Of a stretch of DNA of 64,000 nucleotides, positions 18,062 through 63,998 are shown in pieces. The notes beneath the pieces were generated by a model. It did no database searches. It was not told the DNA's origin and saw nothing but the letters and a program-made list of their open reading frames with translations. Position numbers and translations under genes: made by a program. Within the stretch, counting starts at the first letter, position 1. Every line of letters begins with the position of its first letter. Where the stretch lies: the IMG/VR virus record IMGVR_UViG_3300031951_000001, positions 1-64,000 of that record. One strand, given 5' to 3'.

Positions 18062-18562
18062 TTATTTCTTTCCACCAAAAGTTTTGATTGTAAAATACCA
18101 ACTTGGTTTTATGTGTTTTGGGTCTTCTATAACCACATAGATTCTACCTGTTTCTAACCCTGTATTATCATCAGAAACCGCATCTTTACCAACGGCAACT
18201 GTCCAAATATATCCCTCTTCATCCTTTACCATACTTTGGATATACATTGAGTAACGGCTAAACCATTTCTCAACAATAAATCCATTGTTAGGTAATCCCT
18301 CTGAACTAAGTGTAAGTTTAGATGGATATTTGATACCAATCAAGGTTCCCTTGTTAGAAATATCAACATAAATCGCATGTTTCCCAGCCTTTACCTTCTT
18401 CTGTTCCCAATTTATTGAAATGGTGTCAGGAGGAATAAATGTTCCTTCTTCAAATGTTTGAACTACCCACAAATCTGATTTAAAAGACACCGGGTCTTTG
18501 TAAGTTTGTGAGAATGCGTTAAGCGTTACTATGGTGAATAGTAATAAAAATACGTGTTTCAT
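18062..18562 (-). CDS. Secreted protein with SPI signal peptide
   Basis: MKHVFLLLFTIVTLNAFS|Q. Confidence 0.7.
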   Translation of the reverse strand: MKHVFLLLFTIVTLNAFSQTYKDPVSFKSDLWVVQTFEEGTFIPPDTISINWEQKKVKAGKHAIYVDISNKGTLIGIKYPSKLTLSSEGLPNNGFIVEKWFSRYSMYIQSMVKDEEGYIWTVAVGKDAVSDDNTGLETGRIYVVIEDPKHIKPSWYFTIKTFGGKK

Positions 18563-18629
18563 TTATTAGGTTTTATAGTAAATATCTTAAACAAAACGCG
18601 AGTTAAGATAGACTATAATTTTTTAGTTG

Positions 18630-18701
18630 TAGTCGGTAGGGGATTCGAACCCCTATGACAAGAATGAAAATCTTGTATCCTAACCCTTAGATGAACCGAC
18701 C
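18630..18701 (-). tRNA. trnE: tRNA-Glu(TTC)
   Basis: Cloverleaf: GGTCGGT/ACCGACT acceptor, CAAGA-TTTTCAT-TCTTG anticodon arm, AGGGG-TTCGAAT-CCCCT T arm; CCA not encoded. Confidence 0.92.
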
Positions 18702-20466: not shown

Positions 20467-20895
20467 TTAAAATTTGTAGTCGAATGTTAGGCCATCATGG
20501 CATACAATATTCTTATCAACGATATCCCTCAATTTATCGGTAGGATAAGGACCCATTAATCTTTTTTTACATTCTTCTACATTATCTTCCATTAGGTCAA
20601 CACCATATGTGGTGGATAATGCTTCTTCTAATGAACATCCACTTCTTTCCATCTTTCGTATAACAATCTCACCCAAAAACTCACCATCACCGCAGCTGTT
20701 ATCAATGAATGTTTTGGTTGGGTCAGTGAATAATGACGGCTCTTGTTCTTCTAACTTATCAATCATTTCAATAACTAAATGATTGGGAGTAAAAACCTCG
20801 GCAGTTTGCTTAATCCTAAGTTTGTCCCTATCAACACCGGACATATAAGTTCGGTTTCTAATGTGATTAATATAATCATTTAACATTATTTTCAA
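20467..20895 (-). CDS. SAM-binding half of an adenine methyltransferase, no catalytic NPPY
   Basis: AEVFTP and IDNSCGDGEFL and YGVDL motifs; ends at IVCHDGL before motif IV. Confidence 0.7.
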   Translation of the reverse strand: MKIMLNDYINHIRNRTYMSGVDRDKLRIKQTAEVFTPNHLVIEMIDKLEEQEPSLFTDPTKTFIDNSCGDGEFLGEIVIRKMERSGCSLEEALSTTYGVDLMEDNVEECKKRLMGPYPTDKLRDIVDKNIVCHDGLTFDYKF

Positions 20896-22063
20896 TATAT
20901 TGAATTTCTAAGTCAGTTAATTCAAATTTTTTGTATAAATCATAATCACTATAATTTGTGTCACTTGATATTTTTGGTATATTTTTGAGTACTTCACCGT
21001 GAAAAAATCCTGAAAACTTACTCAAATTTAAACAATGTTTATATAGTTTTGTATTTAGCAATTTAATCAAAAATTCCGCATCCGCTTTGGAGTCAAATAT
21101 GTGAAAAAAACTGTGTTGAGTTGTATTACAATTAGTATCTATTATAGGATTTAGATATCCACTGTCACTAATTACTACTTTTAATTTGGGATAATTTTCA
21201 GTCATAAAGCTTGAGTAGATTATTTTGCTGGCGTGATATGTTTTATATTTAAAAACATCATCTTTAGTAACCGATAACAAATGTTTTTTGTTAGTTTTAT
21301 GTAATTGACTATTACTTTCAAAGGTATACTTTTCTTTTTTGGAAAAAAATTTATTAAAAATTGAAAAATCAATCGGGTTAGATGAGTTAGGTAATATTTT
21401 ATCTTTAAGACTTATGGATTCTCCACCAATTTTACACAATCCATCATAATTTTTAGACCAATAATAATAACAAGCTTGAGTACCCACACCAATAAAAGGG
21501 GATTCATCGAATATTTTTAGTAATTTTAAACCTCCACTTTCATACATTTTTTTCAAAACTAAGTGATTTGGTGATAAAAAACTTGGTGGAGTTATAAAAA
21601 AAACATTATCGGAAATTTCCATAGATTTTATAATAAATTTGGACCAAAGGTTATTAGCACCGCCTTTACCACCACCCTTACTTTTACCGTTATTATCAAC
21701 TTCTTGATATGGAGGGTTACCAATCACAACATCAAATTTCATTTTAATTTTATCACTTAAAAAATCTTTATGATGGATATTAACATAACCTCTTCTTTTG
21801 AGTTTGTTAATGTATTTTATACGGATTTCATAACCGTAAACTCTAGATTTAGCGTCCAACTCACTATATCCATAAATATCAACCAAACGTCTCACAATCT
21901 CAGAAAGGAATGTCCCTGTGCCCATGCAAGGGTCTAAAAAGTTTGATTTTGAATTTAACCATACATCTGAAGGAATCTCATCTAAAATAAGATTAACCAA
22001 TTCGATAGGGGTAAATACTTCACCTTTAGAAGGGTCTGGCTTCCATTTTTTTAAGTTGTCCAT
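20876..22063 (-). CDS. Eco57I-like (gamma class) N6-adenine DNA methyltransferase with target-recognition region
   Basis: GEVFTP, FLDPCMGTGTF and DVVIGNPPY motifs. Confidence 0.88.
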   Translation of the reverse strand: MDNLKKWKPDPSKGEVFTPIELVNLILDEIPSDVWLNSKSNFLDPCMGTGTFLSEIVRRLVDIYGYSELDAKSRVYGYEIRIKYINKLKRRGYVNIHHKDFLSDKIKMKFDVVIGNPPYQEVDNNGKSKGGGKGGANNLWSKFIIKSMEISDNVFFITPPSFLSPNHLVLKKMYESGGLKLLKIFDESPFIGVGTQACYYYWSKNYDGLCKIGGESISLKDKILPNSSNPIDFSIFNKFFSKKEKYTFESNSQLHKTNKKHLLSVTKDDVFKYKTYHASKIIYSSFMTENYPKLKVVISDSGYLNPIIDTNCNTTQHSFFHIFDSKADAEFLIKLLNTKLYKHCLNLSKFSGFFHGEVLKNIPKISSDTNYSDYDLYKKFELTDLEIQYIENNVK

Positions 22064-41237: not shown

Positions 41238-42449
41238 ATGAAATTTATAATTACCGAAGAGGAAAAAAAATATATTAAGGGACTCTATGGGTTGATAACT
41301 GAACAGACCAATGTTTCTAATGTTGTCATACCCGACAATATTTTGGAATATTCATATGACGAATGGGTAAAATGGTATAATGAAAATATAAAACCATTCA
41401 ACTCTACAACTCTAAGGAAAATAGTAAAAAATCGTATACCCGATAACCCTGATTTATTATTATCAGATGGTATAAGAAGCATCACTAAAACTCCGGATGA
41501 TAGAAGTAAATTCAATGGATTATTGAAAAAGTTTAACACTCCTCTATCTTCAAGTGCGACTATTTCAGAAAGAGATTCATTAATTTCAGCCTTCGAGCTA
41601 GCTCAAAATCTTGTTAATGAAGTTTATGAAAAATGGAATGATAGTTTGAAAAAAAATATGGTATTAACCATAACAGAAACAACAGAAACCGTTCCTGGCG
41701 AATCTATCGGTGGTACGGTAGAATTCCCAATTGAATGGAATCCTGATACCAATATTCAGTTATATGTTAATAATGAGTGGGAGTTGTCTCCAGAAGCCAT
41801 TGAATCTTATAATCAAAATATTCTAAGTAAAGTAAATATTGCGAAAGAACAATTCCCAAATGCGATAATATCATTGAAGTCATTGGATATTCAAACTTCT
41901 GCATCAAGATATAGAAATACCGGGCGGGCATCCGATTTAACTTTTCAAGAGCTATCAGGATATAGAAACAATTCTGCCAAAGATTATATAATTAATTCAT
42001 TAAAAGAAAATGGTGTCACCGAGACGGATACCGTAACCCCAACTCAACAATATTTAGGAAGTAATGGTGATGGTACCACAGGACCTAATCCTCCTGAGCC
42101 AAATGCTTATGTTAATGGAGGTAATGTTAAAATGAATACAACATCTACCGAACCAAGAAACCAATTTGGAGAACCTCACGCAACACCTGAAGAATATAAC
42201 CAATACAAATATTTAAAAGTGAAAATTGTTTTAGCCGCCACGATAGAGACAGAGGAAACCACACAGTCACCTGTTGAAGTTTTCAATTACTCATTGGATA
42301 TTGACGGTAAAATTATACCACCACCAACTCCGGTTAAAAGACCAAAACCAAAAGGTAAGTCATCCTCATTTAATTTCAGGGATAAATTAGCAGGATTTTT
42401 GAGTATAAATCCTAAATTATGTGCCGCTTATCAATCAGGAGGAAACTAA
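41238..42449 (+). CDS. Leader-bearing protein with possible OmpA-like region
   Basis: MKFIITEEEK..LITE leader; IQTSAS..LSGYRNNSAKDYI pattern. Confidence 0.45.
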   Translation: MKFIITEEEKKYIKGLYGLITEQTNVSNVVIPDNILEYSYDEWVKWYNENIKPFNSTTLRKIVKNRIPDNPDLLLSDGIRSITKTPDDRSKFNGLLKKFNTPLSSSATISERDSLISAFELAQNLVNEVYEKWNDSLKKNMVLTITETTETVPGESIGGTVEFPIEWNPDTNIQLYVNNEWELSPEAIESYNQNILSKVNIAKEQFPNAIISLKSLDIQTSASRYRNTGRASDLTFQELSGYRNNSAKDYIINSLKENGVTETDTVTPTQQYLGSNGDGTTGPNPPEPNAYVNGGNVKMNTTSTEPRNQFGEPHATPEEYNQYKYLKVKIVLAATIETEETTQSPVEVFNYSLDIDGKIIPPPTPVKRPKPKGKSSSFNFRDKLAGFLSINPKLCAAYQSGGN

Positions 42450-43028
42450 TACAAAACAAGCGACCATTTCGTTTTCTTTATTGTATGAGATGCCCACTGC
42501 AAAAGTTTGACCATCACTCAATAATGTGTCATTATGACCAGGACTTAATATCCAGCATTTTAACACTACCAAACTCAAACAGTCATAATAATTCATTCCT
42601 TCTTCATAAACAATAAGGACGGGATAAATCATGTGACCCATCATTAGGTTTTCACGAACGTCAACATAATTAACACCATACAAATCGCATCTCTCATCAA
42701 CGTCTTCTTTTGAAGATGTAGGTTGTTTGTGGTCCAAGTAACCATTCTTCAAACAGTAAGAAGATTGTTCAGTTGCAACCTTTACGATTGATTTATCGTA
42801 TGAAACAAATTCTAAACCTTTTGATTTACGGTATTTATTGTAATTTTTTTCAAAATACACATTGAATGAATCAATCGAGAACGTCTTTACGTTCGGTTTA
42901 ATAACCAACATAGTTTTTTCTAATTCGTCAACTGTCATTACTTTATTGCCCAAAGTTTTTTCTGTGGATTGACAGTATGAAAAAATGTTCAGGGACAAAA
43001 AAAGTGAGGTAATTAATAGTGGTTTCAT
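42435..43028 (-). CDS. Secreted CAP/SCP-domain protein
   Basis: Signal peptide ending YC|Q; NKYRKSKGL..LDH..ENL..WILSPGHND. Confidence 0.8.
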   Translation of the reverse strand: MKPLLITSLFLSLNIFSYCQSTEKTLGNKVMTVDELEKTMLVIKPNVKTFSIDSFNVYFEKNYNKYRKSKGLEFVSYDKSIVKVATEQSSYCLKNGYLDHKQPTSSKEDVDERCDLYGVNYVDVRENLMMGHMIYPVLIVYEEGMNYYDCLSLVVLKCWILSPGHNDTLLSDGQTFAVGISYNKENEMVACFVLVSS

Positions 43029-43405
43029 TTTGTTATATGATATTCTAAAGTATCTAAAATTTGTACAACACCTACAGTATTATAATCCCAAAATTCACTC
43101 CCAACAGGAATGGTTTGTTCGTATGTTAAATTATTACGCAAATCTAATACCAAAAAACGATTTTTGGGTAAGGTGTCGATAAAAATACTATCTACGATAA
43201 TAAATTCTACATCAACATTTGTGTTCTCAAGAAGTTTTACATCATCTTCAGTTACTTCTGACAAACTTTGTTCAAATGAATTATCAATAATACGTTCGTA
43301 TTTTTTTTTACTAATACGAGAACCGTCAGACAACTGAACATTCTTTCTTGTTACACAAGATGATGTTAGTAGAATTACTATGATATATGTGAATATATTT
43401 TTCAT
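43025..43405 (-). CDS. Lipoprotein
   Basis: Lipobox LTSS|C. Confidence 0.65.
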   Translation of the reverse strand: MKNIFTYIIVILLTSSCVTRKNVQLSDGSRISKKKYERIIDNSFEQSLSEVTEDDVKLLENTNVDVEFIIVDSIFIDTLPKNRFLVLDLRNNLTYEQTIPVGSEFWDYNTVGVVQILDTLEYHITK

Positions 43406-48936: not shown

Positions 48937-49269
48937 ATGAAAAAGATAATTACTTTGGTTTTTTTGATGATGTCCATTATGTCTTTTGGACAAAAATTTA
49001 ATGCCGAGTATAATTTGGTTATTGATTACAATGGTAAGGAAAGACTTGAAAAAAATCATTCAGGAGTTTGGACCGTATCCGACTCAACCTTGTATCAGTT
49101 TTATGATAACGACACTTTAGAATATAAAATTTCAGAAATAAAAGGTAGAAATGTTTTTCATGTAAATGATTTTGGAGAAACAGTTAAATTTTTATTTAAC
49201 GCAAATGGAGATGTTGTAAGAACTAATATGACAAGACCAAATCAATATCTTATTTACAGAAAAAGATAA
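48937..49269 (+). CDS. Secreted protein
   Basis: MKKIITLVFLMMSIMSFG|Q. Confidence 0.7.
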   Translation: MKKIITLVFLMMSIMSFGQKFNAEYNLVIDYNGKERLEKNHSGVWTVSDSTLYQFYDNDTLEYKISEIKGRNVFHVNDFGETVKFLFNANGDVVRTNMTRPNQYLIYRKR

Positions 49270-49987: not shown

Positions 49988-50469
49988 GTTTTTGGTTTTC
50001 TACCCCTTTTCTTTTTTTCAGGTACTGGAGTTGGCGTCGGGGCGTTAATAGATAATTCAGTTAATTCAACACCATCCTCATCATCCTTGTGAAGTTTTTT
50101 GTAATTTTTCCAAGAAATTAGAAAACCAATAAAAATTAGTGAGATAAAGATTAAGATAGTTATTAGCATAGTTTTTCAGATAAATATATAAAAAAACCCC
50201 TTTTAGTAGGGGTTTTTAATTATTTGGTTAATTTAATTTTATCGTTTCTTCTCCAAGACGTGAGCTCGTTCGATTGCCATTTCTTGAGTTTTAAATCCTT
50301 TTTCTACCAATTTCTTGGCGTGATAGATTTGAAAGTCAGTTGATGCTACTTCGGGACCCATGTGTTTGGATGACCCATCTTTTTTTGGACGGAATGAATC
50401 TTTACCATAAATGTCGTAGTGACCTACTTTGGTCATATAACGACCTCGTGAATTACCTTTTGTTGCCAT
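49978..50469 (-). CDS. Two small proteins (49978..50169 membrane-anchored with basic tail; 50239..50469)
   Basis: ORFs separated by a terminator at about 50192-50218. Confidence 0.6.
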
Positions 50470-50555
50470 GTTTATATAAAATTATTAATTTTGTTTGATG
50501 GTACAAATATATGAAACAAATCGATTGAAAACAGAAAAAAAATAAAAAATATTTT

Positions 50556-51334
50556 TTGATACCATATATTTTTTCACTTACATTTGTTCAAATGAAAATA
50601 CAATTAAACCCTTTCTCGCAAGTATTGTTGAGTGAATCTCACAAAGAAATTGTTTTGTTACCCTCACCCCAATTACATTATTACGATAAAGTAATGGGGA
50701 AAAACGATTGGACTATCGTCTTATCTATTAAGTTTATTATATGGGAAGTAGGATTGGCTATGGTTAAACCTGCGGAAATTATTAATACCAATAAAAATCA
50801 AGAACTGTAATGAGTAAAATATTAAGTAATTTTAAGAACATACATTTCTTGTGGTTAGTAGGTGTAATTTGTTTTTTGTCATTCTACATTCCTGTTGCTT
50901 GTTTTACAACATATTCAGATTATGTTCCCGAATGGACTCTACCGATATTTGTTTTTTCAACCATGATTCCACTTTGGTTTCATGAGTTTTTATGGAGGAC
51001 CGCTCAAATAGGGTCGGCTTCATATTTGGGGTTTCATGAGTTACATTTTGAGGATAGAAAATGGAAAAAGAAAACTTGTAATCCATTTTACTTTTTGTTT
51101 CACTATTTTTGGTGGTTAAGAAGAAAACCAATATTTTGGTTAATGACTTTAGCAATTATCGGGAGTCTTATTTACGGATATGTTGCTCCCTACGATGAGG
51201 ATGGGATTCACCCATTCACTCCTTTCCACGGTATAAATGCTATTTGGTGGCTTGGAATTATAAAAGATTTTGTTATATTTAGAAACGACGCTAAAGAAGG
51301 ATTAATTAGACATTATAGACACAATTACGAATGA
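50556..51334 (+). CDS. Hypothetical protein (about 50592..50810) and polytopic membrane protein (50810..51334)
   Basis: TACATTTG upstream; several TM helices. Confidence 0.6.
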
Positions 51335-53145
51335 AACATTTAATTTTATTACTATCAATTTTACTATCGTCTCTAACTTCATTTTCACAATGTGGTGGAG
51401 CTCTTACATTTGATTTAAGTACCCCACCAGCCGCTGACGGAACATACCCCCCCAACACAACCATAGAACTTTGTGTTACAATGACCGGATGGAATGGTAA
51501 TGCCCAAGGGTCTAATTGGATGGAAGGTTTCGGATTAACATTGGGAGCGGGATGGGTAGTTGTGAATCCAACACTTCCTCCTGACGATGCTGACGCAGAT
51601 GCAAGCGGAACTTGGTTATGGATGAATACTGTAACTTCTGATGCCACAGGTTTGGTGGCAGGTCCTGGTTATTTCTTTGAAGGTCCGACAGGCCCAACAG
51701 ATGGTAACCCCGGTAATGACTGGGGTGACTATTGTATGAATGGAGATTGTGTTTGGACTTTCTGTGTCGAACTTACTTCATCGGGTAATAGTGGTGACCC
51801 TTTAAATATTGAGGTACAAAACTTTTCTGATGGTACTATGGGGAGTTGGGGTAATGCCGATTGTGTAGGTCAAGACCCACCTGTTAGTATTTTTATTGGA
51901 GAGGTTGGATGTAACACATATGGATGTACAAACGCTGCGGCTTGTAACTATGATGCCAACGCGGCTTGTGATGATGGTAGTTGTATTTTACCAGGTTGTA
52001 CCGACCCACTTGCCTGTAACTTTGATTTAAACGCACCCTGTGATGACGGTAGTTGTACTTATGGTGGATGTACCGACCCAATTGCCTGTAACTTCAATCC
52101 ACTTGCGGGATGTGATGACGGAACTTGTAACTATTTCAGTATGGGGGACATAACCCATAATTTTATCCCATGTCCTGACACAACTTGTACTGGTTCAGAG
52201 GTAATGTATTCAGTTACAGGAAATATTACTTCCACATATGATTGGCAAGTTTCAGGTGGAGGACTTGTAACTACTGACCTCACAAAAGATTGTGAAATTA
52301 TTTGGGGGGACATTCCTGGAACATATACAATTACGGTACAAGAAACTACGGAGGAAGGATGTGTCGGAGTAATTAAAACTTGTGAAGTTGAACTTATCAT
52401 ACCCGATATTATATTCAATCATAACTCATTTTCAATGTGCTTAAATTCGTCGGATGAGATTATACCGTTTCCGCAAGGTGGAAGTTGGTCTTCAGAGTTT
52501 ATGAATGGAAACACATTTGTTGGAACCAAACCTGGAACATATCATCCATCCTACCTTACTAATATTCACGGATGTGACATCCAAGAAGAAGTTGAGGTTG
52601 TTGTTAAAAGAAAATACGAAGCTCCAAATATTATTTATAGTGCCGAGTTAATTGACCTTTGTTTTGATTCGGGAGTTCAAACATATATTGCTGAAGATAC
52701 AGTTGGTGTAACATACGGATGGTTTATCGACGAAGTTAAACAATTATCGAACGAAAATAATATGACAATCGAATGGTATGATACTACACGAACTTATATT
52801 GTTAAGGTGATTGCTTACGACGAGATTGGTTGTGAAAGTGAACCAAAATTAATATCCGTAAAAACCGAATCCTGTCAGAGATTTTTCGCACCAAACTCAT
52901 TTACGCCTAATGGTGATGGAACAAACGACATTTTTGAAGTCAGAGGATTGTCAGTTTATAGACCAATGATGAGAGTATTCAATAGGTGGGGTGTGGTAGT
53001 TTATGAATCATCAAATCTTTGGTGGACTGGTGATAGTGGAAGTGGTTACTATTGTGACAATGGAATCTATAATTGGATAATTGAATATAAAGATAAATTC
53101 GGACAGAATAAACAAGAGTCCGGTTATGTAACACTTATTAGGTAA
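51331..53145 (+). CDS. Secreted Cys-rich repeat protein with T9SS type-B (gliding-motility-associated, CHU_C-like) C-terminal domain
   Basis: Signal peptide SFS|Q; three GCT(N/D)..ACN..A.CDDG(S/T)C repeats; FAPNSFTPNGDGTNDIF..FNRWG..GYVTLIR. Confidence 0.88.
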   Translation: MKHLILLLSILLSSLTSFSQCGGALTFDLSTPPAADGTYPPNTTIELCVTMTGWNGNAQGSNWMEGFGLTLGAGWVVVNPTLPPDDADADASGTWLWMNTVTSDATGLVAGPGYFFEGPTGPTDGNPGNDWGDYCMNGDCVWTFCVELTSSGNSGDPLNIEVQNFSDGTMGSWGNADCVGQDPPVSIFIGEVGCNTYGCTNAAACNYDANAACDDGSCILPGCTDPLACNFDLNAPCDDGSCTYGGCTDPIACNFNPLAGCDDGTCNYFSMGDITHNFIPCPDTTCTGSEVMYSVTGNITSTYDWQVSGGGLVTTDLTKDCEIIWGDIPGTYTITVQETTEEGCVGVIKTCEVELIIPDIIFNHNSFSMCLNSSDEIIPFPQGGSWSSEFMNGNTFVGTKPGTYHPSYLTNIHGCDIQEEVEVVVKRKYEAPNIIYSAELIDLCFDSGVQTYIAEDTVGVTYGWFIDEVKQLSNENNMTIEWYDTTRTYIVKVIAYDEIGCESEPKLISVKTESCQRFFAPNSFTPNGDGTNDIFEVRGLSVYRPMMRVFNRWGVVVYESSNLWWTGDSGSGYYCDNGIYNWIIEYKDKFGQNKQESGYVTLIR

Positions 53146-53399
53146 TGTACGATAGAAAAGTTATGTTAAGATTATTTTGGTCCATTGTTTTCATTATATT
53201 GTTATGTATAATGACATTATTGGTCGGATGTACGAGTAGAGAAAAACAAAAAGAAATTAGTGTATATGATGTTGATACATTAGATACAGAATACTCCGTT
53301 TATATAATTGATAGTTGTGAGTATATAATTTTTTACGGAGGTAGTTCGACTTGGGGAAGTCATAAAGGAAATTGTAGTAATCCGATTCACAATAGATAA
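53145..53399 (+). CDS. Small lipoprotein
   Basis: LLVG|C; HKGNCSNPIH tail. Confidence 0.6.
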   Translation: MYDRKVMLRLFWSIVFIILLCIMTLLVGCTSREKQKEISVYDVDTLDTEYSVYIIDSCEYIIFYGGSSTWGSHKGNCSNPIHNR

Positions 53400-53418
53400 T
53401 TTGCCGTATATTCGCGGT

Positions 53419-54480
53419 ATGAATGAGGTTTTGAATAGATATTATGAGGAAGGATTGGTGTATAAACAAGTACATCCGACCCTTCCTTTGACTATTTGGA
53501 ATTATTCTGAAAAGGTTCAGTATGATAATTTATGGGATGATATAACTTTACAAACTCGAGGTCTTGTAACTGATGACGAGGGTAATATAATCGCAAGACC
53601 ATTTCGTAAATTTTTCAATGACACTGAAGGAAGACATACTCCGACAGAAGAATTTGATGTTTATGAAAAAATGGACGGTTCTTTAGGTATCCTATTTAAT
53701 TATCAAGGTGAATGGGTTATGGCTACCCGAGGGTCATTTGTATCTGAACAAGCAATCAAAGGTTTTGAGATTCTCAAGAATTATGATTATGAAAAACTTC
53801 ACAAGAATTACACTTACCTGTTTGAGATAATCTATAAGGAAAACAGAATAGTGGTTCAGTATGATTATGATGACTTAATCCTTATTGGTGTGATAGAAAC
53901 CAAAACCGGATACGAAGTTGATTTACATGATGGAGAAAATGATATCAGGTTGAGGAATATGATACATAATCTTGGGTTTAAATTGGTAAAAAAATACGAC
54001 CAACTTAAAAATTTTTCTCACTTGAAAGATTTTATACCCGACAATAAAGAAGGGTATGTTATAAAATTTTCTAACGGCGAAAGAATAAAAATCAAAGGTG
54101 AAGAATACTTAAGATTACATAAACTGATGACAAATGTCTCAACAACTGCGGTTTGGGAAATGTTAAGTGAGGGTCGTGATGTCTTGGAAATACTGAAAGA
54201 TGTTCCTGATGAATTCTATAAAAGAATAAAGATGTATGTTTTAGATTTGAGATATTCTTATTTATCTTATAGTGAATACGCGGGAAAAATGCATGACAAA
54301 TTCCGTTACGGTAAATTTAACGATAGATATCCCGAGCCGACCAAAAAAGAATTTGCGGAATTTTTGACATTGAATAATATTGACCCGAAGGTGAAAGCAT
54401 TATGCTTTGCGATATGGGACAATAAGAATTATGATAAAATGATATGGAAATATATAAAACCTGAATTTAAAAGATTATGA
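53419..54480 (+). CDS. T4 Rnl1-like RNA ligase
   Basis: ARPFRKFFN, EKMDGS (motif I), ATRGSF, FEII, EGYVI and RIKIKGEEY; start ATG 53419. Confidence 0.9.
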   Translation: MNEVLNRYYEEGLVYKQVHPTLPLTIWNYSEKVQYDNLWDDITLQTRGLVTDDEGNIIARPFRKFFNDTEGRHTPTEEFDVYEKMDGSLGILFNYQGEWVMATRGSFVSEQAIKGFEILKNYDYEKLHKNYTYLFEIIYKENRIVVQYDYDDLILIGVIETKTGYEVDLHDGENDIRLRNMIHNLGFKLVKKYDQLKNFSHLKDFIPDNKEGYVIKFSNGERIKIKGEEYLRLHKLMTNVSTTAVWEMLSEGRDVLEILKDVPDEFYKRIKMYVLDLRYSYLSYSEYAGKMHDKFRYGKFNDRYPEPTKKEFAEFLTLNNIDPKVKALCFAIWDNKNYDKMIWKYIKPEFKRL

Positions 54481-55151
54481 ACATTTTAATTAAATACCCC
54501 TCGAGAGGAAGACCCGAGTTGTTTAAACAAACAACACAAAAATTTATAGATAAATTATCAGCTAAACACGATGTTAAATTTGTTTTTTCTCTTGATATAG
54601 ATGATAAAACTATGAATAATTCTGAAATTATTGAGTTTATGATGTCATTACCCATCAAGAAGAAGATAAATTTTAGAAATAATAAAAGTAAAGTAGATGC
54701 GATAAACACAGATTTGGACGATGAAAAATTTGATATTTTAATCTATATACAGGATGATTTGACACCAATTATTCATGGGTATGATGATTTGATTGCAAAC
54801 CAATTTGAAAAATCGGAGTATGGTCTGGATTGTATGATACATTTTCAGACCCCAAGATGGTCCGATTCTTTGGACATATATTGTGTGATGGGTAAAAAAT
54901 ATTATGATAGATTTGGATATGTATATCATCCGTCTTATAAGGCTCTTTTTTGTGATGACGAATACACCGAAGTTTCTAAATTATTAGGTAGAAATGTTTT
55001 TGTACCCGGCATTGACCCATTTCATCATAATCATGGTTTAATACAAGGGGATGAAGTTGAAATGACAAATAGGTCTCATGGAAATGAGGATTGGGCTCTT
55101 TTACAGCAAAGAAGAGAGAATAATTTTTATTTGGATTTATCATCAAATTAA
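54477..55151 (+). CDS. GT-A (GT2-like) glycosyltransferase
   Basis: IKYPSRGRP..DILIYIQDD..YHPSYKALFCDDE. Confidence 0.75.
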   Translation: MNILIKYPSRGRPELFKQTTQKFIDKLSAKHDVKFVFSLDIDDKTMNNSEIIEFMMSLPIKKKINFRNNKSKVDAINTDLDDEKFDILIYIQDDLTPIIHGYDDLIANQFEKSEYGLDCMIHFQTPRWSDSLDIYCVMGKKYYDRFGYVYHPSYKALFCDDEYTEVSKLLGRNVFVPGIDPFHHNHGLIQGDEVEMTNRSHGNEDWALLQQRRENNFYLDLSSN

Positions 55152-55168: not shown

Positions 55169-55873
55169 ATGAAAGCGATTGTGTTAGGAAAAGGGAAGTT
55201 GGGAAGTGAAATTGTTAAACAAACGGGATGGGACTACTTGTGTAGGGCTGAACATGAAATTACAATTGATAATTTCGATGAGTGGAAAAATAAAATGGAC
55301 GATTACGATGTGGTTGTTAATTGTATTGCAAACACCGATACGTATTCGGATGACAAGGACAAACATTGGAAAGCCAATTACGAGTTAGTAACTTACTTGG
55401 CGGAGTATTGTGATGACTACGGAAAGAAGTTGGTTCATATATCGACCGATTACCTTTATCAAAATTCGGTAACAGAAGCAACCGAAGAAGACGAACCATT
55501 GTTTGACCATACTTGGTATATGTTCACTAAATTATTGGCTGATGAATATTTGAAAGAACATGCGAAAAATTATTTGATTTGTAGATTGTCACATAAACCA
55601 TATCCATTTCCTTATCATAGTGCTTGGACTGATGTGATGACAAACGCCGATTATACACCAGTAATTTCTGATTTAGTTATTAAATTAATTGAAGGAGGTG
55701 CTAGTGGTTTGTATAATGTTGGTACAGAAAAAAAGTCAATTTACCAACTGGCCAAAAGAACCAAAGAAGATGTTAAAGAAATATTTTCACCACCACACGT
55801 ACCAAAAGATATTTCGATGAATTTGTCAAAAATGGAAAAATTCTTATTAAATTTGTATCAAGTATCGGAGTAA
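55169..55873 (+). CDS. RmlD-like NAD-dependent sugar-nucleotide reductase
   Basis: VLGKGKLG, VVNCIANT, HISTDY, YMFTK and GLYNVG motifs. Confidence 0.8.
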   Translation: MKAIVLGKGKLGSEIVKQTGWDYLCRAEHEITIDNFDEWKNKMDDYDVVVNCIANTDTYSDDKDKHWKANYELVTYLAEYCDDYGKKLVHISTDYLYQNSVTEATEEDEPLFDHTWYMFTKLLADEYLKEHAKNYLICRLSHKPYPFPYHSAWTDVMTNADYTPVISDLVIKLIEGGASGLYNVGTEKKSIYQLAKRTKEDVKEIFSPPHVPKDISMNLSKMEKFLLNLYQVSE

Positions 55874-58188: not shown

Positions 58189-59805
58189 ATGAAAGATATT
58201 AACGACCTTCACCAAGAACTTGATGATTTGACTTACCTTAACGCAAAGATGAGAGATGAGGGATTTGATTATTGTTTCCGTCATTATTCATCATTTGAAG
58301 AAATTAAGGATGAGAAGTTTCACGAACTCAGGTTGAAGTACATTCAAATTGCCGAGGAACTTGAGAACTATGTGAACACTCAATATGAATTGAAACAAGA
58401 CGAAATTGATAACTACGAAGAAAAAGATGAAAATTAATATGAATATAACTCGGCATTTTTTTTATGTCTTGTTAACGGTTTTTATTTTATCTGGTTGTGG
58501 AGAATCAGTCAATGAAAAAAACTTTGATATAAGTATGCAGAAAATAAATGGTGAATGGATACGCGAATCACATTCATTACCTGAAGACGCAGATTTTTTC
58601 ATTGACACTTTCAATGGCAGTTATTCATTACGATATATTAGAGGTGAAGGTAATTGTTTTTCCAAAAGAGAGAAACTTGTGAGAAACGGGATTATTGATT
58701 ATAGGATTAATAACTAATAATTACGAATATGAAAATAACATTTGGCGACCTCAAAACAGGGGACAGAATTAAGACAAGATACTCAGGTATGGCAACGGTA
58801 GTTGAAACTGGTTGTTATAAAGGAACAATGGTTAAACTGAAATGTGATACCCCAAAGTGGTGCTGTCCTTATTTTTATGAACACGAATTAGAATTAATAT
58901 GAATAATACAGAAATAACACCGGTACCTGAAATCACCGCCGACACCACAAGAGTATGTGAAATCAGATTTGATTGTTTGGTTACAATGCATGATGTGGGA
59001 TATAGAAAATATGAAGGGATGTGGGGTCAGGAGAAACAATCAAAGACACCACAATGGTTCAGAGCGAATCATAAAATAACACTTGAAAGCGTTAAACACG
59101 CTGACCCATATGAACTTGGGATGAGAATAAAACAAATGTTTCACGAATTAGAAAATACAATTAAAAAATATGAAAACGGAACAACCTATCAAAGTCATGA
59201 ATAAAGAACAACAACAGATTATTGATGAGGTGTATGAGAGATATTGGAGTAGTATTGAAACTTCAGAATATGATGGGATTGGTCCTACATCAATTAAGTT
59301 ACCAACACTAATGAAAGAAGAGTTCATCAACAAATGTAAAACAGACCCAGAGTTCTCTGAAAAGTGGGGGTTGAAGATTTATACCAAAGTAGATGGTGAT
59401 AAGGTTTGGATGGGAATGGTTTATAATGATAATGCTGTTGAAATTAGATTAAAATAGAAAGTTATGAATGAAATACGTAGGCTAATTAAAAAAATTGAAT
59501 ACACACATTATATAGAGTATAAGGGAAAACAATATACTAGAAAAGAAGTTATTATACCAAAGGCTTTTTCTTGGGAAGGTACACCTGATAAACTTGAGGA
59601 TATACATACTATTTCGTGGCAAGATTATGATTATGAGGTTTATCAAAATAATGGAAATATTCATTATTTTAGTTGTGACCACGGATGGGCTAAAAATGGC
59701 GTGATGGATAAATCAAATCCTGTGCCTAAAATAGAAAAATGTTTCAAAAAAACTATTGGTAAAGATTTAATATATTTCAACGAAACAATAGAAAGTTATG
59801 AGTAA
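58189..59805 (+). CDS. Run of hypothetical proteins (58189..58437, lipoprotein 58427..58717, 58899..59204, 59170..59457, 59464..59805)
   Basis: Coupled ORFs; lipobox LSG|C in the second. Confidence 0.6.
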
Positions 59806-61102
59806 AATACAAGTAACACAACCAACATTTCTAATCAATTTAGATAATCCGACAGAAGTTAGTTATGTGCCAATGGAAGGTAATTGGAAATCAATTATAG
59901 TTGAAACATATCAACATGGGTTTCCTGAAATACAAGATGATGAAATTCTTTATGTCTATAAAGAAAATAGAGGTTATATTAAAAAACAAGTTATGACTAA
60001 TACATTAGACAAACAATACCAAGACCTACTCCAAACAATTTTGGATTTTGGTTGTACGAAGAGTGACAGGACTGGAACTGGAACCAAATCAATTTTTGGT
60101 TACACCATCCGTCATAATATGAAAAACGGATTCCCACTTCTTACAACAAAGAAGATGGCGTTTAAAACAATGGTAACCGAGTTGTTATGGTTCTTGAGAG
60201 GTGATACTAACATCAAATACCTTGTTGACAATAATTGTCATATCTGGGACGGAGACGCTTTCAAAAACTACATCAGTAAAACTAATGAATTCAAAGGTGA
60301 TTGGCCGGACACAATGGAAGAATTCATCAACAAAATAAAAACGGATGATGGGTTTGCTAAAAAATATGGGGAATTGGGTTCCATCTATGGGAAACAATGG
60401 AGAAGATGGACTAAAAAGAAAATGTATCTATCAACAGATGGTTCATATGAAAACATTTATGATGAGGCAGACCAAACAGTTATAGACCAAATAGCAATCC
60501 TCATTAACGAACTCAAAACAAACCCAGACTCAAGACGACTAATGGTTTCAGCTTGGAATGTAGGTGAATTAGACCAAATGGTTCTTCCACCTTGTCATTA
60601 TGGATTTCAAGTTTATACAAGAGAGTTGAGTTATGATGAAAAAAGAAACATTTATAATTCAGACCCAATGAGTTATGGAGGTACAGCGTCTCCATTACCA
60701 CCAAATTCTGAAGAAATTAAATTTGACCCCCATCACGCAGAGAAAGATTGGGACAATAATTACGCAAGTAAAAAGATTCCAACCAGAGCAATCTCATTAA
60801 TGTGGAATCAACGTTCCGTCGACACATTATTGGGGCTCCCATTCAATATAGCATCATACGGATTACTATTAACAATAATTGCCAAAGAAGTTAATATGGT
60901 ACCTGATGAATTGATTGGAAATTTGGGTGATACCCATTTATACCTCAACCATATTGAACAAGCAAAAGAACAGATTGGTAGAGAACCATTTGAATTACCA
61001 AATTTAGTAATAGAACATAGTAGTTTAGAGCCGGTTGAATTGGTTTATAAGTTAGAAAACTATCAATCACATCCAGCAATTAAGGCACCACTATCCAACT
61101 AA
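59798..61102 (+). CDS. thyA: Thymidylate synthase with N-terminal extension and insertions
   Basis: DRTGTGT, FPLLTTKK, ELLWFLRG, LPPCH, QRSVD and PFNIASY; core could start at ATG 59993. Confidence 0.95.
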   Translation: MSKIQVTQPTFLINLDNPTEVSYVPMEGNWKSIIVETYQHGFPEIQDDEILYVYKENRGYIKKQVMTNTLDKQYQDLLQTILDFGCTKSDRTGTGTKSIFGYTIRHNMKNGFPLLTTKKMAFKTMVTELLWFLRGDTNIKYLVDNNCHIWDGDAFKNYISKTNEFKGDWPDTMEEFINKIKTDDGFAKKYGELGSIYGKQWRRWTKKKMYLSTDGSYENIYDEADQTVIDQIAILINELKTNPDSRRLMVSAWNVGELDQMVLPPCHYGFQVYTRELSYDEKRNIYNSDPMSYGGTASPLPPNSEEIKFDPHHAEKDWDNNYASKKIPTRAISLMWNQRSVDTLLGLPFNIASYGLLLTIIAKEVNMVPDELIGNLGDTHLYLNHIEQAKEQIGREPFELPNLVIEHSSLEPVELVYKLENYQSHPAIKAPLSN

Positions 61103-61641
61103 TGAATAAAATTATTATAATATTTTTTATATTATTGAGTTTGGTTTCACATTCTCAAAAATATATTGTCTCACAAAATAACACAAAATCTAATGAGTGG
61201 GTAATTGTTTGGGGTGGAAAACCAAGCACTAGTTATGGTGCGGAATACATGGTTGATAAGGCCTCATTGCACCTAAATTGTAATAATGTTATTTACGCCG
61301 ATTACCAATTATCAAGACAAAAGTGTGATGAAATTATAAAAAAGGTTTCACCAAATGGGGTTGTTACTGAAGTTTATGGATTTTCAAGGGGTGGATATAA
61401 CGCCTTTATGGAAATAGGAAAAGTTAAATATGTTTGGTTAATTGACCCCCTTATACCACAAAAATATGATACCCCATTTGGTATTACAAATGTCTTTATG
61501 ATTTACAATCCATCGGTATGGGATGGGGGTAATAGCTCAAGATTAAAAAACTTTTCAACCAAATTAAAACCTGTCAACTCGGTAAGGGTTGATATGTCTC
61601 ACCTTAAAATACCGAACTATTTTTTTAATACTTACCGATAA
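61102..61641 (+). CDS. Secreted protein, possibly alpha/beta-hydrolase-like
   Basis: Signal peptide SHS|Q; VYGFSRGG (GxSxG) and LIDP. Confidence 0.5.
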   Translation: MNKIIIIFFILLSLVSHSQKYIVSQNNTKSNEWVIVWGGKPSTSYGAEYMVDKASLHLNCNNVIYADYQLSRQKCDEIIKKVSPNGVVTEVYGFSRGGYNAFMEIGKVKYVWLIDPLIPQKYDTPFGITNVFMIYNPSVWDGGNSSRLKNFSTKLKPVNSVRVDMSHLKIPNYFFNTYR

Positions 61642-62103: not shown

Positions 62104-62857
62104 ATGGAAAATCTATTATTAAAATCAGAACCAGTGGACGCACCTTCTTTTACATTTAGTCTAGAAGAAAAGACAATCATTGTTATTGACTCAAAAGGAT
62201 TTAGTTATAAAGGAGAGTTAATTGAAGATGCCGGAGAAGTGTATAATTTATTTAAAAGTTTTTTGGAACAATCATTAAATAACTACTAAAAATAAAACCA
62301 ATGGCACGCTATAGAGTATTAGAAATCACAGATAAGTTAATTTATAACGGAAGACCATATTGGGTTATTGAAAAAAAAATACTAGGTCTATGGTGGACTC
62401 AGTATTTTGAAGAACATTCAGAGTGGGGAGCAACCTATTATGAAAAAGATAAGGCGATGACCTGGTATGAATATCACTGCGATAATGACTCAAGAATAAA
62501 AACCAAAGTAATTGCTCAAAACAAATGATGGAAGACCTCAAACATAGATGGGAACAAATTGACGAGGACGATTATGTTGCCAAATATCGTGATATGATGC
62601 TCCGAGTTGAAAAGATGGAGGAGCAACAATGGTGGTGGGCGGTTTATAGAGGAAAAGAAGAACTATGTCCCGAGAAACCATTTGCGAGAAAGAAAGATTA
62701 TGCGATGAAGATGGCAGAGGAATGTGCCGAGGAAAACATTGAACCATATGTTTCAGATGATTTTCAGATTGGACCGGATGGTGCGTTTGAATATACTGAC
62801 GATGAAATATCAGAGTGGGACGGAACATTAATGGACGGACTTGAAGAAGAGGAATAA
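62104..62857 (+). CDS. Three hypothetical proteins (62104..62289, 62301..62528, 62525..62857)
   Basis: Coupled ORFs. Confidence 0.6.
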
Positions 62858-63998
62858 GAATATTATTTGGTTAATAATTCTCACATTAAGTGGATTGGTG
62901 TCGCTCGCCCAATGTCCTAACGCAAATTTTGAATTTGGTACCTTTACTAACTGGACTGGTAAGAGAGGAACTTGTTGTCCGATTAATCTACCATTTGTAG
63001 GTATATTGGCAGGTAGACAAACAATTGTAAGTGCCGGACTTGACCCCCATTCTTGTGGGGGACTAAACAGAGTATATCAAGGTAATTTTTCGGCAAGATT
63101 GGGTAATGACCAAAACAATTCAAGAGCCGAAGGGTTGTATTATACATTTACCGTAAGCCCCGCAACAACGTTAGTTCAGTATGCTTATGCTGTTGTTTTA
63201 CAAGACCCTGGACATAATGACGGAGCTCAACCAAGATTCCAATCAAGGGTTAGATTATCTAATGGTAGTATTATACCTTGCACAGAATATGTTGTAACTG
63301 CGGGACCTAACCTTCCTGGTTATAATTATTGTATGGAAAATGATATTTTTGGAAATCCAGTACAGGTTGCTTATAGTGATTGGAGGGTTATTTCAATTGA
63401 TTTATCTTCTTATGTTGGACAAAGTGTTACACTTGAATTTGAGACAGGTGATTGTGATTTAGGTGCTCACTATGGTTACGCATATATTGACGCAATATCT
63501 TGTGGACCAATTGAGACAGAAATTTATTATTGTCAAGCAAGTGACTCTATTTTGATTGAGGGACCTGAAGGTTTTGCAACATATGAGTGGGTTGAAACTG
63601 GTGACACAACAAGGGTTATAACAATTCCCCCATTAGTTTATGATACGTTAAATTTAAATGTTACAACTGTTACTGGATGTGAATTAACTCTCCAAATTAT
63701 TTTGGACCCAATTCCACTTCTTGCAAATATTATTTGTGAGGATGTTTGTTTTCCTGATTCTAATAATTTTATTAATCTTACTCCTACCATAGAAGGATAT
63801 AATGTAAAATTTTTATGGGATTTTGACGACGGAAATATATCTGATGATATATCACCAACTCACCAGTACTTGTCACCAGGTGTTTATAATGTAACAATGA
63901 CCGCAAATGTATTAAATACAAACTGCACGGATATTGTAAATTGCGAGGTTGAGGTCTTCGATATTCCTGTAATTCCTGGAATTATTAGTCACGATTAG
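62841..63998 (+). CDS. Secreted Bacteroidota-type beta-sandwich protein with C-terminal PKD domain
   Basis: Signal peptide SLA|Q; NANFE.GTFTNW, SARLGN and YAVVLQDPGH; WDFDDG..SPTHQY..PGVYNVTMT PKD motif. Confidence 0.8.
   Translation: MKKRNKNIIWLIILTLSGLVSLAQCPNANFEFGTFTNWTGKRGTCCPINLPFVGILAGRQTIVSAGLDPHSCGGLNRVYQGNFSARLGNDQNNSRAEGLYYTFTVSPATTLVQYAYAVVLQDPGHNDGAQPRFQSRVRLSNGSIIPCTEYVVTAGPNLPGYNYCMENDIFGNPVQVAYSDWRVISIDLSSYVGQSVTLEFETGDCDLGAHYGYAYIDAISCGPIETEIYYCQASDSILIEGPEGFATYEWVETGDTTRVITIPPLVYDTLNLNVTTVTGCELTLQIILDPIPLLANIICEDVCFPDSNNFINLTPTIEGYNVKFLWDFDDGNISDDISPTHQYLSPGVYNVTMTANVLNTNCTDIVNCEVEVFDIPVIPGIISHD

What the first reader, a model, noticed from the sequence alone, without database searches (positions are those of the whole stretch)
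51331..53145. Phage-encoded substrate for the host type IX secretion system
Seen: signal peptide, acidic beta-rich domain, three Cys-rich GCTD-type repeats, Ig-like segments and a complete type-B CTD at the C-terminus. Established: type-B CTD proteins such as SprB are exported by T9SS with a PorP/SprF-like partner and displayed on the surface. No such partner is recognisable here. Inference: the phage uses host T9SS to display its own surface protein or to jam secretion and gliding, for example masking receptors or changing adhesion of infected cells.
Basis: partly seen in the sequence, partly recalled or inferred. Interest (0 to 1): 0.6.

Follow-up and report, generated by a model that had tools for sequence, protein, structure and literature searches.

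The report
Jumbo-phage type B T9SS surface protein
A 322-kb freshwater phage, and its many relatives, carry a well-conserved gene for an exported, adhesin-like protein that ends in the tag Bacteroidota use to place proteins on their surface, so the phage probably uses the host's type IX secretion system to redecorate the infected cell.

Summary
ORF 51331-53145 (+, 604 aa) has a signal peptide, an acidic beta-sandwich domain, three 24-residue four-Cys repeats and three Ig-like domains. It ends in a complete type B CTD (Pfam CHU_C 60.2 bits, cut-off 27; TIGR04131 33.2, just under 35).

It is not host contamination. The record is a 322,372-bp virus with a T4-like terminase. The gene is tightly packed with conserved phage genes, and full-length homologues (48-100% identity) lie in syntenic contigs of related phages up to 321 kb.

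The genome holds a second, 190-aa type B CTD protein. It has no PorP/SprF gene, in a search that finds 10-16 copies in each of five Bacteroidota MAGs. It has no convincing type A CTD.

The missing partner is not an obstacle. F. johnsoniae has "orphan" type B cargoes that share an unlinked shuttle, and in one Flavobacteriales MAG the phage CTD matches orphan CTDs best.

Most likely the protein is exported by Sec and then the host T9SS, and held on the surface by a host PorP/SprF-like shuttle. What it does there is inferred only. "Jamming" is not favoured.

Phage T9SS cargo has been published for type A CTDs (Cryophage, 2020). I found no report for type B.

The parts
50810..51334 (+). Upstream 174-aa hydrophobic protein, apparently with several membrane-spanning segments, of unknown family. 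Its stop overlaps the start of the CTD gene (ATGA).
   Evidence: ORF; junction read. No Pfam or PHROG family. It lies directly upstream of the homologue in relatives of 64-79% identity, and in the same locus in L018. The membrane topology is read from the sequence, not computed.
51331..53145 (+). Gene for the 604-aa exported type B CTD protein (P0001).
   Evidence: More than 100 clusters of full-length homologues at 50-93% identity.
51331..51387 (+). Sec signal peptide, aa 1-19. Predicted signal peptidase I cleavage leaves an N-terminal Gln (the Bacteroidota Q-rule).
   Evidence: Sequence. Q20 and C21 are nearly invariant. Modelled as a helix at aa 2-13. Q-rule: PMC5837995. No signal-peptide predictor was available.
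51388..51915 (+). Acidic N-terminal beta-sandwich domain, aa 20-195. Adhesin- or pilin-like fold with no catalytic signature.
   Evidence: AF2 pLDDT 85.8, pTM 0.82. VIA Z 8-9 to AgI/II C-domains, Gram-positive pilins and alpha-2-macroglobulin MG domains. TM 0.74-0.85 to mostly viral ESM Atlas clusters and to one Bacteroidota CUB+SprB cluster. 32 of 176 columns invariant.
51922..52137 (+). Three tandem 24-residue repeats with four Cys each (GCTDxxACN[YF]...CDDG[ST]C), aa 198-269.
   Evidence: Copy number varies from 1 to 3 among homologues. The same repeat forms long arrays in proteins of many Flavobacteriales MAGs, at up to about 70% identity. No Pfam model matches.
52138..52872 (+). Three Ig-like beta-sandwich domains, aa 270-514.
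   Evidence: AF2 model. Foldseek matches to GhpA, titin and other tandem-Ig proteins. Weak Ig_7 hit. Two homologues lack one domain.
52873..53145 (+). Type B T9SS C-terminal domain (CHU_C, aa 515-604) at the extreme C-terminus, followed by the stop codon.
   Evidence: PF13585 60.2 bits. TIGR04131 33.2 bits against 35. 22 of 90 columns invariant, the highest share of any region.
53145..53399 (+). Downstream 84-aa predicted lipoprotein (LLVGC lipobox). Its start overlaps the stop of the CTD gene (TAATG).
   Evidence: phrog_19356, function unknown. Conserved directly downstream in relatives of 66-79% identity.
62841..63998 (+). 385-aa PKD-domain protein ending in ISHD. It is the first gene of a second cluster that continues outside the window: G000 64047-64604 (PKD_6 protein, also ending ISHD) and 64607-65179 (190-aa signal peptide + Ig + CHU_C protein).
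   Evidence: The cluster and the ISHD ending are conserved in a relative.

Best explanation
P0001 is a real, long-resident gene of a clade of freshwater T4-related jumbo phages whose hosts are Bacteroidota.

**Proposed route (inferred).** The protein is made in the infected cell and exported to the periplasm by Sec. Signal peptidase I cleaves it before Gln20. The host type IX secretion system then recognises its type B C-terminal domain. A host PorP/SprF-like outer-membrane shuttle takes it from the translocon and keeps it on the cell surface, because the phage encodes no shuttle of its own. The shuttle is probably of the kind that serves "orphan" type B cargoes.

**Proposed role (inferred).** The passenger is all-beta and has no recognisable enzyme domain: an acidic beta-sandwich, disulfide-rich repeats and Ig-like spacers. 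It would therefore act as a binding or coating protein. It could change what the infected cell sticks to, or cover the surface against further phage adsorption.

**What is shown:** the gene, its domains, its phage context, its conservation, and the absence of a phage shuttle gene.
For: **Domains**
- Domains and signals.
- The mature protein has 30 Cys and pI 4.05, which fits an extracytoplasmic protein.

**Phage identity**
- Virus record of 322,372 bp, CheckV completeness 100%.
- T4-type terminase at 112 kb. The nearest cultured relative is Flavobacterium phage vB_FspM_immuto.
- Neighbours include a T4 Rnl1-like RNA ligase and thymidylate synthase.
- The start and stop codons overlap those of the neighbouring phage genes.

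**Conservation**
- 1383 hits at E <= 0.001 (most below 50% identity and probably sharing only the CTD or repeats); the 120 listed are 42-100% identical, nearly all full length, on contigs up to 310 kb.
- Syntenic in IMG/VR contigs up to 321 kb.
- The CTD is the region with the most invariant columns.

**Bacteroidota host**
- About 16 of the phage's ORFs have signal peptides that end before Gln (Q-rule PMC5837995).
- The Cys repeat is shared with many Flavobacteriales MAG proteins.
- Cellular homologues are T9SS type B cargoes of Bacteroidota MAGs, set among housekeeping genes.

**No phage shuttle**
- PF11751 finds nothing in the phage. The same search finds 10-16 copies in each of five Bacteroidota MAGs.
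- A custom HMM built from 20 PorP/SprF proteins also finds nothing.

**Orphan route is precedented**
- Orphan type B cargoes of F. johnsoniae use the unlinked shuttle Fjoh_1677 (PMC12618676).
- Type B cargoes stay bound to PorP-like proteins (PMC9143113).
- In MAG G003, CTDs without an adjacent PorP/SprF gene match the phage CTD better than those with one: 23 against 10, Mann-Whitney p = 5.7e-5.

**Other**
- A second type B CTD protein lies in the same genome.
- Short contigs of a close relative of the gene occur in one sediment metatranscriptome. This is weak, because DNA carry-over is not excluded.
Against: - No experiment shows secretion.
- The host is not identified, so neither its T9SS nor a matching shuttle is known.
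- TIGR04131 falls 1.8 bits short of its cut-off.
- The five type B motifs A-E of PMC12618676 could not be mapped, because the figure is not held.
- Type B CTD and shuttle pairs are reported as highly specific (PMC12618676). A foreign CTD might therefore not be accepted.
- The function of the N-domain is unknown. Fold matches of Z 8-9 are in the range the tool calls common.
- The orphan-versus-paired comparison rests on one MAG and on hand-read adjacency from truncated lists.
Confidence: 0.58

Rival explanations
1. The protein is secreted by the T9SS but released rather than anchored. It would then act outside the cell, for example by binding polysaccharide or particles, or by binding to progeny virions or cell debris after lysis.
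For: - sfGFP fused to type B CTDs is recovered in culture supernatant when the shuttle is co-produced (PMC12618676).
- The phage also encodes a secreted Endonuclease_NS and an S8 subtilase, so it has an extracellular programme.
- The N-domain fold also occurs as stand-alone proteins of about 190 aa in mostly viral clusters.
Against: - Type B CTD proteins are reported to stay associated with PorP-like proteins for surface anchorage (PMC9143113).
- The Ig-like spacer string is typical of surface-anchored stalks such as GhpA.
Confidence: 0.17
2. The protein is a decoy cargo. Its CTD occupies the host T9SS translocon or a shuttle and so shuts down secretion and gliding. The passenger part would matter little.
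For: - The phage brings no shuttle of its own.
- Over-produced type B CTD fusions are not secreted without extra shuttle (PMC12618676), so shuttles can be limiting.
- T9SS and gliding proteins are recalled as phage-resistance loci in Flavobacterium. This is from memory and was not checked here.
Against: - The passenger domains are conserved as strongly as the CTD: N-domain 70%, Cys repeats 79%, CTD 72% mean identity, with 32 invariant N-domain columns.
- A plug would not need 500 residues of conserved, disulfide-rich passenger.
- The 190-aa CHU_C protein would be a better candidate for such a role.
Confidence: 0.08
3. The CHU_C domain serves here only as a structural beta-sandwich. The protein would be periplasmic or a virion component (decoration or fibre) and would not pass through the T9SS.
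For: - Phage decoration and fibre proteins often carry Ig-like domains (general knowledge).
- TIGR04131 is just under its cut-off.
- The CTD loop at aa 520-534 is modelled with low confidence.
Against: - The cleavable signal peptide, with its conserved Q20-C21 site, would send the protein out of the cytoplasm where heads and tails assemble.
- 30 Cys point to an oxidising compartment.
- The domain sits at the extreme C-terminus and matches the whole Pfam profile.
- The gene lies among nucleotide-metabolism genes, far from the giant ORFs at 160-300 kb, which are presumed (not shown) to be structural.
Confidence: 0.1
4. The gene is host DNA: either a chimeric assembly or a very recent passenger with no role for the phage.
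For: - Cellular homologues exist. L031 is 44% identical over the full length, within a Bacteroidota MAG.
Against: - One Logan contig of 9.6 kb spans the whole stretch without any difference, though that run may be the source of this DNA. Independent freshwater runs cover the stretch in separate identical pieces.
- Identical loci occur in three other IMG/VR contigs.
- Synteny with phage genes holds on both sides across relatives of 48-79% identity.
- Its divergence matches that of neighbouring phage genes: 70% against 64-80% in L013.
- GC content at the locus is no outlier.
Confidence: 0.02

Closest known systems
Orphan type B CTD cargoes of Flavobacterium johnsoniae (Fjoh_1123, Fjoh_1720, Fjoh_4934), served by the unlinked SprF-like shuttle Fjoh_1677 (PMC12618676)
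   Same: Both have a Sec signal peptide plus a C-terminal CHU_C/TIGR04131-type domain, with no PorP/SprF gene next to the cargo gene. The passengers are putative adhesins. In MAG G003 the phage CTD matches orphan CTDs best.
   Different: This gene is encoded by a phage, so the shuttle must come from another genome. No identity to the F. johnsoniae proteins was measured here. Secretion is untested.
SprB/SprF and Fjoh_3952/Fjoh_3951 cognate pairs (type B cargo with an adjacent shuttle gene)
   Same: The CTD family is the same. Both have a long beta-rich passenger displayed on the cell surface. Bacterial relatives of the N-domain carry SprB repeats.
   Different: No adjacent shuttle gene, and none anywhere in the phage genome. 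P0001 itself has no SprB repeats and is far smaller than SprB. Nothing points to movement along the gliding track.
"Cryophage" T9SS cargo genes (Bellas et al. 2020, PMC7468147)
   Same: Phage-encoded proteins with T9SS sorting domains, proposed to hijack the host system.
   Different: Those carry type A domains (PorV route, possibly cleaved or LPS-linked) on enzymes and a PA14 protein, and they are hypervariable island genes. This one is type B, has no recognisable enzyme domain, and is conserved and syntenic across a jumbo-phage clade.
GhpA grappling-hook protein of Aureispira (PDB 9fl*; T9SS-secreted)
   Same: A string of Ig-like domains gives the best Foldseek matches, E about 1e-11. It is also a Bacteroidota surface structure.
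   Different: The match is a generic tandem-Ig resemblance (TM 0.25-0.46, 11-16% identity). GhpA is about ten times longer. No homology is claimed.
Q-rule signal-peptide proteins of Porphyromonas gingivalis phages (PMC10367356)
   Same: Phage proteins adapted to Bacteroidota Sec/SPI export, proposed to modify the host envelope.
   Different: That paper's main text does not mention the T9SS. Those are temperate phages of an oral pathogen.

Membership tests
T9SS type B CTD cargo (CHU_C PF13585 / TIGR04131) | Type B C-terminal domain recognised by the family models, located at the extreme C-terminus | tested here: met
   PF13585 scores 60.2 bits against a cut-off of 27. It covers profile positions 3-86 of 86 at aa 520-602 of 604. 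The six-frame search gave 65.5 bits. Caveat: TIGR04131 scores 33.2 bits against a cut-off of 35.
T9SS type B CTD cargo (CHU_C PF13585 / TIGR04131) | [quoted passage not shown] | tested here: met
   The sequence shows an MKH n-region, a 12-residue hydrophobic core and an SFS|QC site. The Q20-C21 site is conserved in the family. The Q-rule applies (PMC5837995). No dedicated predictor was available, so this rests on inspection.
T9SS type B CTD cargo (CHU_C PF13585 / TIGR04131) | Five conserved motifs A-E within the last 100 residues, each needed for secretion (PMC12618676) | tested here: inconclusive
   The motif sequences are in a figure that is not held. The full-length profile match and 22 of 90 invariant columns fit intact motifs but do not map them.
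T9SS type B CTD cargo (CHU_C PF13585 / TIGR04131) | A PorP/SprF-like shuttle that takes the cargo from the translocon | tested here: not met
   The phage genome has none. PF11751 finds nothing, although it finds 10-16 copies in each of five Bacteroidota MAGs. A custom HMM run with --max also finds nothing. The feature could be met in trans by the host, as for orphan cargoes (PMC12618676). That cannot be tested without knowing the host.
T9SS type B CTD cargo (CHU_C PF13585 / TIGR04131) | Secretion depends on the T9SS core (GldK/L/M/N, SprA) | not testable with these tools
   This needs expression in wild-type and T9SS-mutant Bacteroidota.
T9SS type A CTD cargo (TIGR04183 / PF18962) | Por_Secre_tail domain at the C-terminus | tested here: not met
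   P0001 has no hit. The best match in the whole phage genome is 12.7 bits, below the cut-off of 23, and it lies inside a 1162-aa ORF.
PorP/SprF (PF11751), tested on the phage's 264-aa putative outer-membrane barrel (G000 122699-123493) | Sequence or profile similarity to PorP/SprF | tested here: not met
   hmmsearch gives E 1.2. hhalign gave 85% probability only while the signal peptides were included, and 0.9% once they were removed. ESM Atlas features point instead to Gcw_chp (PF09694) barrels, score 0.97.

The most novel reading that the evidence does not exclude
The jumbo phage may install a multi-part surface coat of its own through the host T9SS. The parts would be P0001, a 190-aa CHU_C "carrier" that takes two CTD-less PKD proteins with the conserved ISHD ending to the surface, and a phage-encoded Gcw_chp-like outer-membrane barrel. 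The barrel gene lies next to the P0001 homologue in some relatives and would act as a non-PorP anchor. Together these would re-programme adhesion, gliding and phage susceptibility of the infected cell. That would be a new kind of virus-driven takeover of a secretion system.
Probability: 0.1. Interest if true: 0.85.

Novelty: new variant of a known kind. Interest (0 to 1): 0.55.

Why it matters
- **A secretion system as a phage tool.** T9SS cargoes shape adhesion, gliding, polymer degradation and virulence in Bacteroidota. A cargo gene that is conserved and vertically inherited in a widespread clade of freshwater jumbo phages would mean viruses routinely use this system to alter the surface of infected cells. 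That bears on superinfection, particle attachment and carbon flow in lakes.
- **A probe for shuttle recognition.** How type B CTDs are matched to PorP/SprF shuttles is an open question. A CTD that must work without a co-inherited partner should carry the minimal signal for a general or "orphan" shuttle.
- **A host marker.** Q-rule signal peptides and type B CTDs could help assign uncultured phages to Bacteroidota.

Tried and rejected
- **Phage-encoded PorP/SprF.** Pfam PF11751 found nothing in the genome, and neither did a custom HMM from 20 MAG PorP/SprF proteins run with --max.
- **The 264-aa barrel as a divergent PorP.** hhalign gave 85% probability, but this came from aligned signal peptides. 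It fell to 0.9% once they were trimmed, so the idea was rejected.
- **Complex prediction of that barrel with the P0001 CTD.** Score 0.00, verdict "no answer". This counts neither for nor against binding.
- **Type A CTDs in the phage.** None is convincing. The S8 subtilase, whose C-terminus looked like a type A CTD by eye, has no Por_Secre_tail hit.
- **Naming the N-domain.** Pfam, NCBIfam and PHROGs gave nothing. ESM Atlas features gave 0.77, which is noise. PDB fold matches show only generic adhesin or pilin beta-sandwiches. No paralogue exists in the phage genome.
- **Close relatives among catalogued phages.** Megablast of 15 kb found nothing. tblastn found only weak CTD or repeat matches in four records, including two uncultured phages of 634-642 kb.
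- **First genome-contig scan with the single protein.** It found nothing. The alignment-based scan worked.
- **PorP/SprF next to bacterial homologues.** None lies within 5 kb of the homologues in L031, L033 or L044.
- **Rfam on the leader region with the odd depth spike.** Nothing above noise.
- **Sigma-70 promoter scan.** No more sites than in shuffled sequence (28 against 26.7). It is also not suited to Bacteroidota promoters.
- **Literature.** I found no report of phage type B CTD proteins.
- **Large representative protein search.** Not used, because the word search and family scans settled what the protein is.
Full report
**1. The observation**

The ORF runs from 51331 to 53145 on the + strand and encodes 604 aa. 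All the listed features are present.
- **Signal peptide (aa 1-19).** It has a short basic n-region, a 12-residue hydrophobic core and the site SFS|QC. Q20 and C21 are kept in at least 90% of 38 aligned homologues.
- **Acidic N-domain (aa 20-195).** It has 21 acidic and no basic residues. Folded alone, it gives a confident beta-sandwich (pLDDT 85.8, pTM 0.82).
- **Cys repeats.** Three 24-residue repeats with four Cys each start at aa 198, 222 and 246.
- **Ig-like domains (aa 270-514).** The full-length model has pLDDT 81. Its best PDB matches are tandem-Ig proteins, among them the T9SS-secreted GhpA of Aureispira.
- **C-terminal domain.** The last 85 residues match the whole Pfam CHU_C profile (PF13585, 60.2 bits against a cut-off of 27, E 2.2e-16). 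NCBIfam TIGR04131 scores 33.2 bits, just below its cut-off of 35.
- **Cysteines.** The mature protein has 30 Cys and pI 4.05, as expected for an extracytoplasmic protein.

**2. Phage or host?**

The gene belongs to the phage.
- **The record.** The window is the first 64 kb of a 322,372-bp IMG/VR virus record that CheckV rates as complete.
- **Hallmark genes.** A T4-type large terminase lies at 112 kb. Its nearest relatives are uncultured huge phages, and the nearest cultured one is Flavobacterium phage vB_FspM_immuto at 27% identity.
- **Neighbours.** Around the gene lie a T4 Rnl1-type RNA ligase, a glycosyltransferase, an epimerase and thymidylate synthase.
- **Gene packing.** The start overlaps the stop of the upstream gene (ATGA). 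The stop overlaps the start of the downstream gene (TAATG).
- **Homologues.** The word search returned 1383 proteins; the 120 listed are 42-100% identical and nearly all full length, on contigs up to 310 kb.
- **Synteny.** Sampled contexts are phage-like and syntenic. The module of membrane protein, P0001 and small lipoprotein is kept in relatives of 64-79% identity. More distant relatives (48-62%) keep the gene among other genes of this phage clade.
- **Rate of change.** Its divergence tracks that of the neighbouring phage genes.
- **Read support.** One 9.6-kb contig spans the stretch without any difference, though that run may be the source of this DNA. Independent freshwater runs cover the stretch in separate identical pieces. 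The stretch, or part of it, is held by 20 runs from 16 studies, mostly labelled lake or fresh water; several are labelled "fungus metagenome".

Host contamination is therefore very unlikely.

**3. The host**

The host is inferred to be a member of the Bacteroidota.
- About 16 ORFs of the phage have signal peptides ending just before Gln, and five more have lipoboxes. N-terminal Gln after signal peptidase I cleavage is the Bacteroidetes Q-rule (PMC5837995).
- The Cys repeat recurs in long arrays in many Flavobacteriales MAG proteins, at up to about 70% identity.
- The closest cellular homologues sit among housekeeping genes such as LptF/G and ABC transporters:
  - L031 is 44% identical over the full length.
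  - L033 and L044 share the N-domain at 31-38% identity and carry SprB repeats and CHU_C.
- These five MAGs each carry 10-16 PorP/SprF genes and 23-46 type B CTDs.

**4. The shuttle question**

The phage has no PorP/SprF gene.
- PF11751 finds nothing in the phage genome.
- That search is valid: it finds 10-16 copies in each of five Bacteroidota MAGs.
- A custom HMM run without filters finds nothing either.

This does not make the protein unusable.
- In F. johnsoniae, 3 of 12 type B cargoes are orphans and share the unlinked shuttle Fjoh_1677. Some crosstalk between pairs also exists (PMC12618676).
- In the one MAG with a megabase-scale scaffold (G003), I compared CTDs with and without an adjacent PorP/SprF gene. 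The 23 without one match the phage CTD at 37.6-71 bits. The 10 with one reach only 37.3-45.2 bits (Mann-Whitney p = 5.7e-5).
- The phage CTD therefore resembles the orphan class. This is a lead, not proof: it rests on one genome, and adjacency was read by hand from lists that are cut short.

**5. What else the phage exports**

- **Second CHU_C cluster.** A second type B CTD protein of 190 aa lies at G000 64607-65179. Two PKD proteins precede it, and both end in ISHD. A 50%-identical homologue elsewhere keeps that ending and the overlapping gene pair.
- **CTD similarity.** The two phage CTDs share about 35% identity.
- **Secreted enzymes.** The genome encodes a secreted non-specific endonuclease and an S8 subtilase.
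- **Putative barrel.** It also encodes a 264-aa protein that looks like an outer-membrane barrel. This protein is not PorP-like once signal peptides are removed, and it resembles Gcw_chp barrels by language-model features. In two distant relatives its gene lies directly or nearly upstream of the P0001 homologue. A complex prediction with the CTD gave no verdict.

**6. The passenger**

- No enzyme family is detected.
- The N-domain resembles adhesin and pilin beta-sandwiches at Z 8-9, a range the tool calls common.
- By shape it recurs in several mostly viral ESM Atlas clusters, including stand-alone proteins of about 190 aa. It also recurs in one Bacteroidota cluster with CUB and SprB repeats.
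- The passenger is as conserved as the CTD. That argues against a pure "plug" role.

**7. Mechanism proposed**

- **Shown:** the gene, its domains, the phage context, the conservation, the absence of a phage shuttle, and the Bacteroidota-type export signals.
- **Inferred:** Sec export, cleavage before Gln20, recognition by the host T9SS, hand-over to a host PorP/SprF-like shuttle of the orphan kind, and retention on the surface. Type B cargoes stay with PorP-like proteins (PMC9143113).
- **Inferred function:** a binding or coating protein that changes adhesion of the infected cell, or masks it from further phage adsorption.

Transcription is only hinted at. Four short contigs, 91-97% identical to the gene, occur in one sediment metatranscriptome, where DNA carry-over cannot be excluded.

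**8. Comparison with what is known, and novelty**

- Phage-encoded T9SS cargo has been published once, to my knowledge. Cryophage carries type A sorting domains on hypervariable enzyme genes, and the authors called it a unique occurrence (PMC7468147).
- P. gingivalis phages encode Q-rule proteins. The main text of that paper does not mention the T9SS (PMC10367356).
- I found no report of phage type B CTD proteins.
- The ESM Atlas already holds a CHU_C cluster labelled 96% viral. Weak CHU_C-like matches also occur in two uncultured phages of 634-642 kb.

I therefore rate this a new variant of a known kind: a type B, partner-less, conserved cargo in a jumbo-phage clade.

**9. Limits**

- No signal-peptide predictor was available.
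- The host is not identified.
- Motifs A-E were not mapped.

Noticed in passing
window 62841-63998; G000 64047-64604 and 64607-65179 (L028 2047-3176): Two signal-peptide PKD proteins both end in the motif ISHD. A 190-aa signal peptide + Ig + CHU_C protein follows them closely. A 50%-identical homologue (L006 15526-16694) keeps the ISHD ending and has an overlapping pair. This may be a carrier-and-passenger set for the T9SS.
   Followed up: partly
whole G000; in the window e.g. 15220-15603, 18062-18562 (-), 42435-43028 (-), 48937-49269, 61102-61641; lipoboxes at 43025-43405 (-), 53145-53399, 58427-58717: About 16 phage ORFs have signal peptides that end just before Gln (the Bacteroidota Q-rule), and five have lipoprotein boxes. 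That is a large phage-encoded secretome and a clue to the host.
   Followed up: partly
G000 122699-126558 (L026 2699-6555): A cluster of three exported proteins. The first is a 264-aa putative outer-membrane barrel ending in LQILF, limited to this phage clade and Gcw_chp-like by ESM features. The others are a secreted Endonuclease_NS (193 aa) and an S8 subtilase (769 aa). In L018 and L017 the barrel gene lies next to, or near, the P0001 homologue.
   Followed up: partly
window 53401-54480, 54477-55151, 55169-55873, 59798-61102: A T4 Rnl1-type RNA ligase (phrog_562, E 1.6e-68), a glycosyltransferase, a nucleotide-sugar epimerase, and a thymidylate synthase with an N-terminal extension of about 60 aa.
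   Followed up: no
window 50522-50695: In two independent freshwater runs (X15, X17), summed contig depth here is 15-20 times that of the flanks. The stretch is the A/T-rich leader upstream of the operon. There is no Rfam match and no long repeat in the genome. Unexplained; it may be low-complexity cross-mapping.
   Followed up: partly
L031 / G004 (CAZKRL010000019.1 and sister contigs): A MAG whose record title says "uncultured Comamonadaceae" holds 10 PorP/SprF genes and at least 23 type B CTD proteins. It looks like a Bacteroidota genome with the wrong label.
   Followed up: no
window 51922-52137 and loci L035, L036, L059, L062, L074: The 24-residue four-Cys repeat (GCTDxxACNYxxxAxCDDGSC) has no Pfam model. 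It forms arrays of many copies in proteins of many freshwater and marine Flavobacteriales MAGs, and also occurs in a marine single-cell virus record.
   Followed up: partly
window 18629-18701 (-) and 20876-22063 (-): A tRNA-Glu (UUC) gene and a DNA methyltransferase (phrog_3689).
   Followed up: no
window 50192-50217: A perfect 10-bp G+C-rich hairpin with T-runs on both strands lies between two minus-strand ORFs. It looks like a bidirectional terminator just upstream of the P0001 transcription unit.
   Followed up: no
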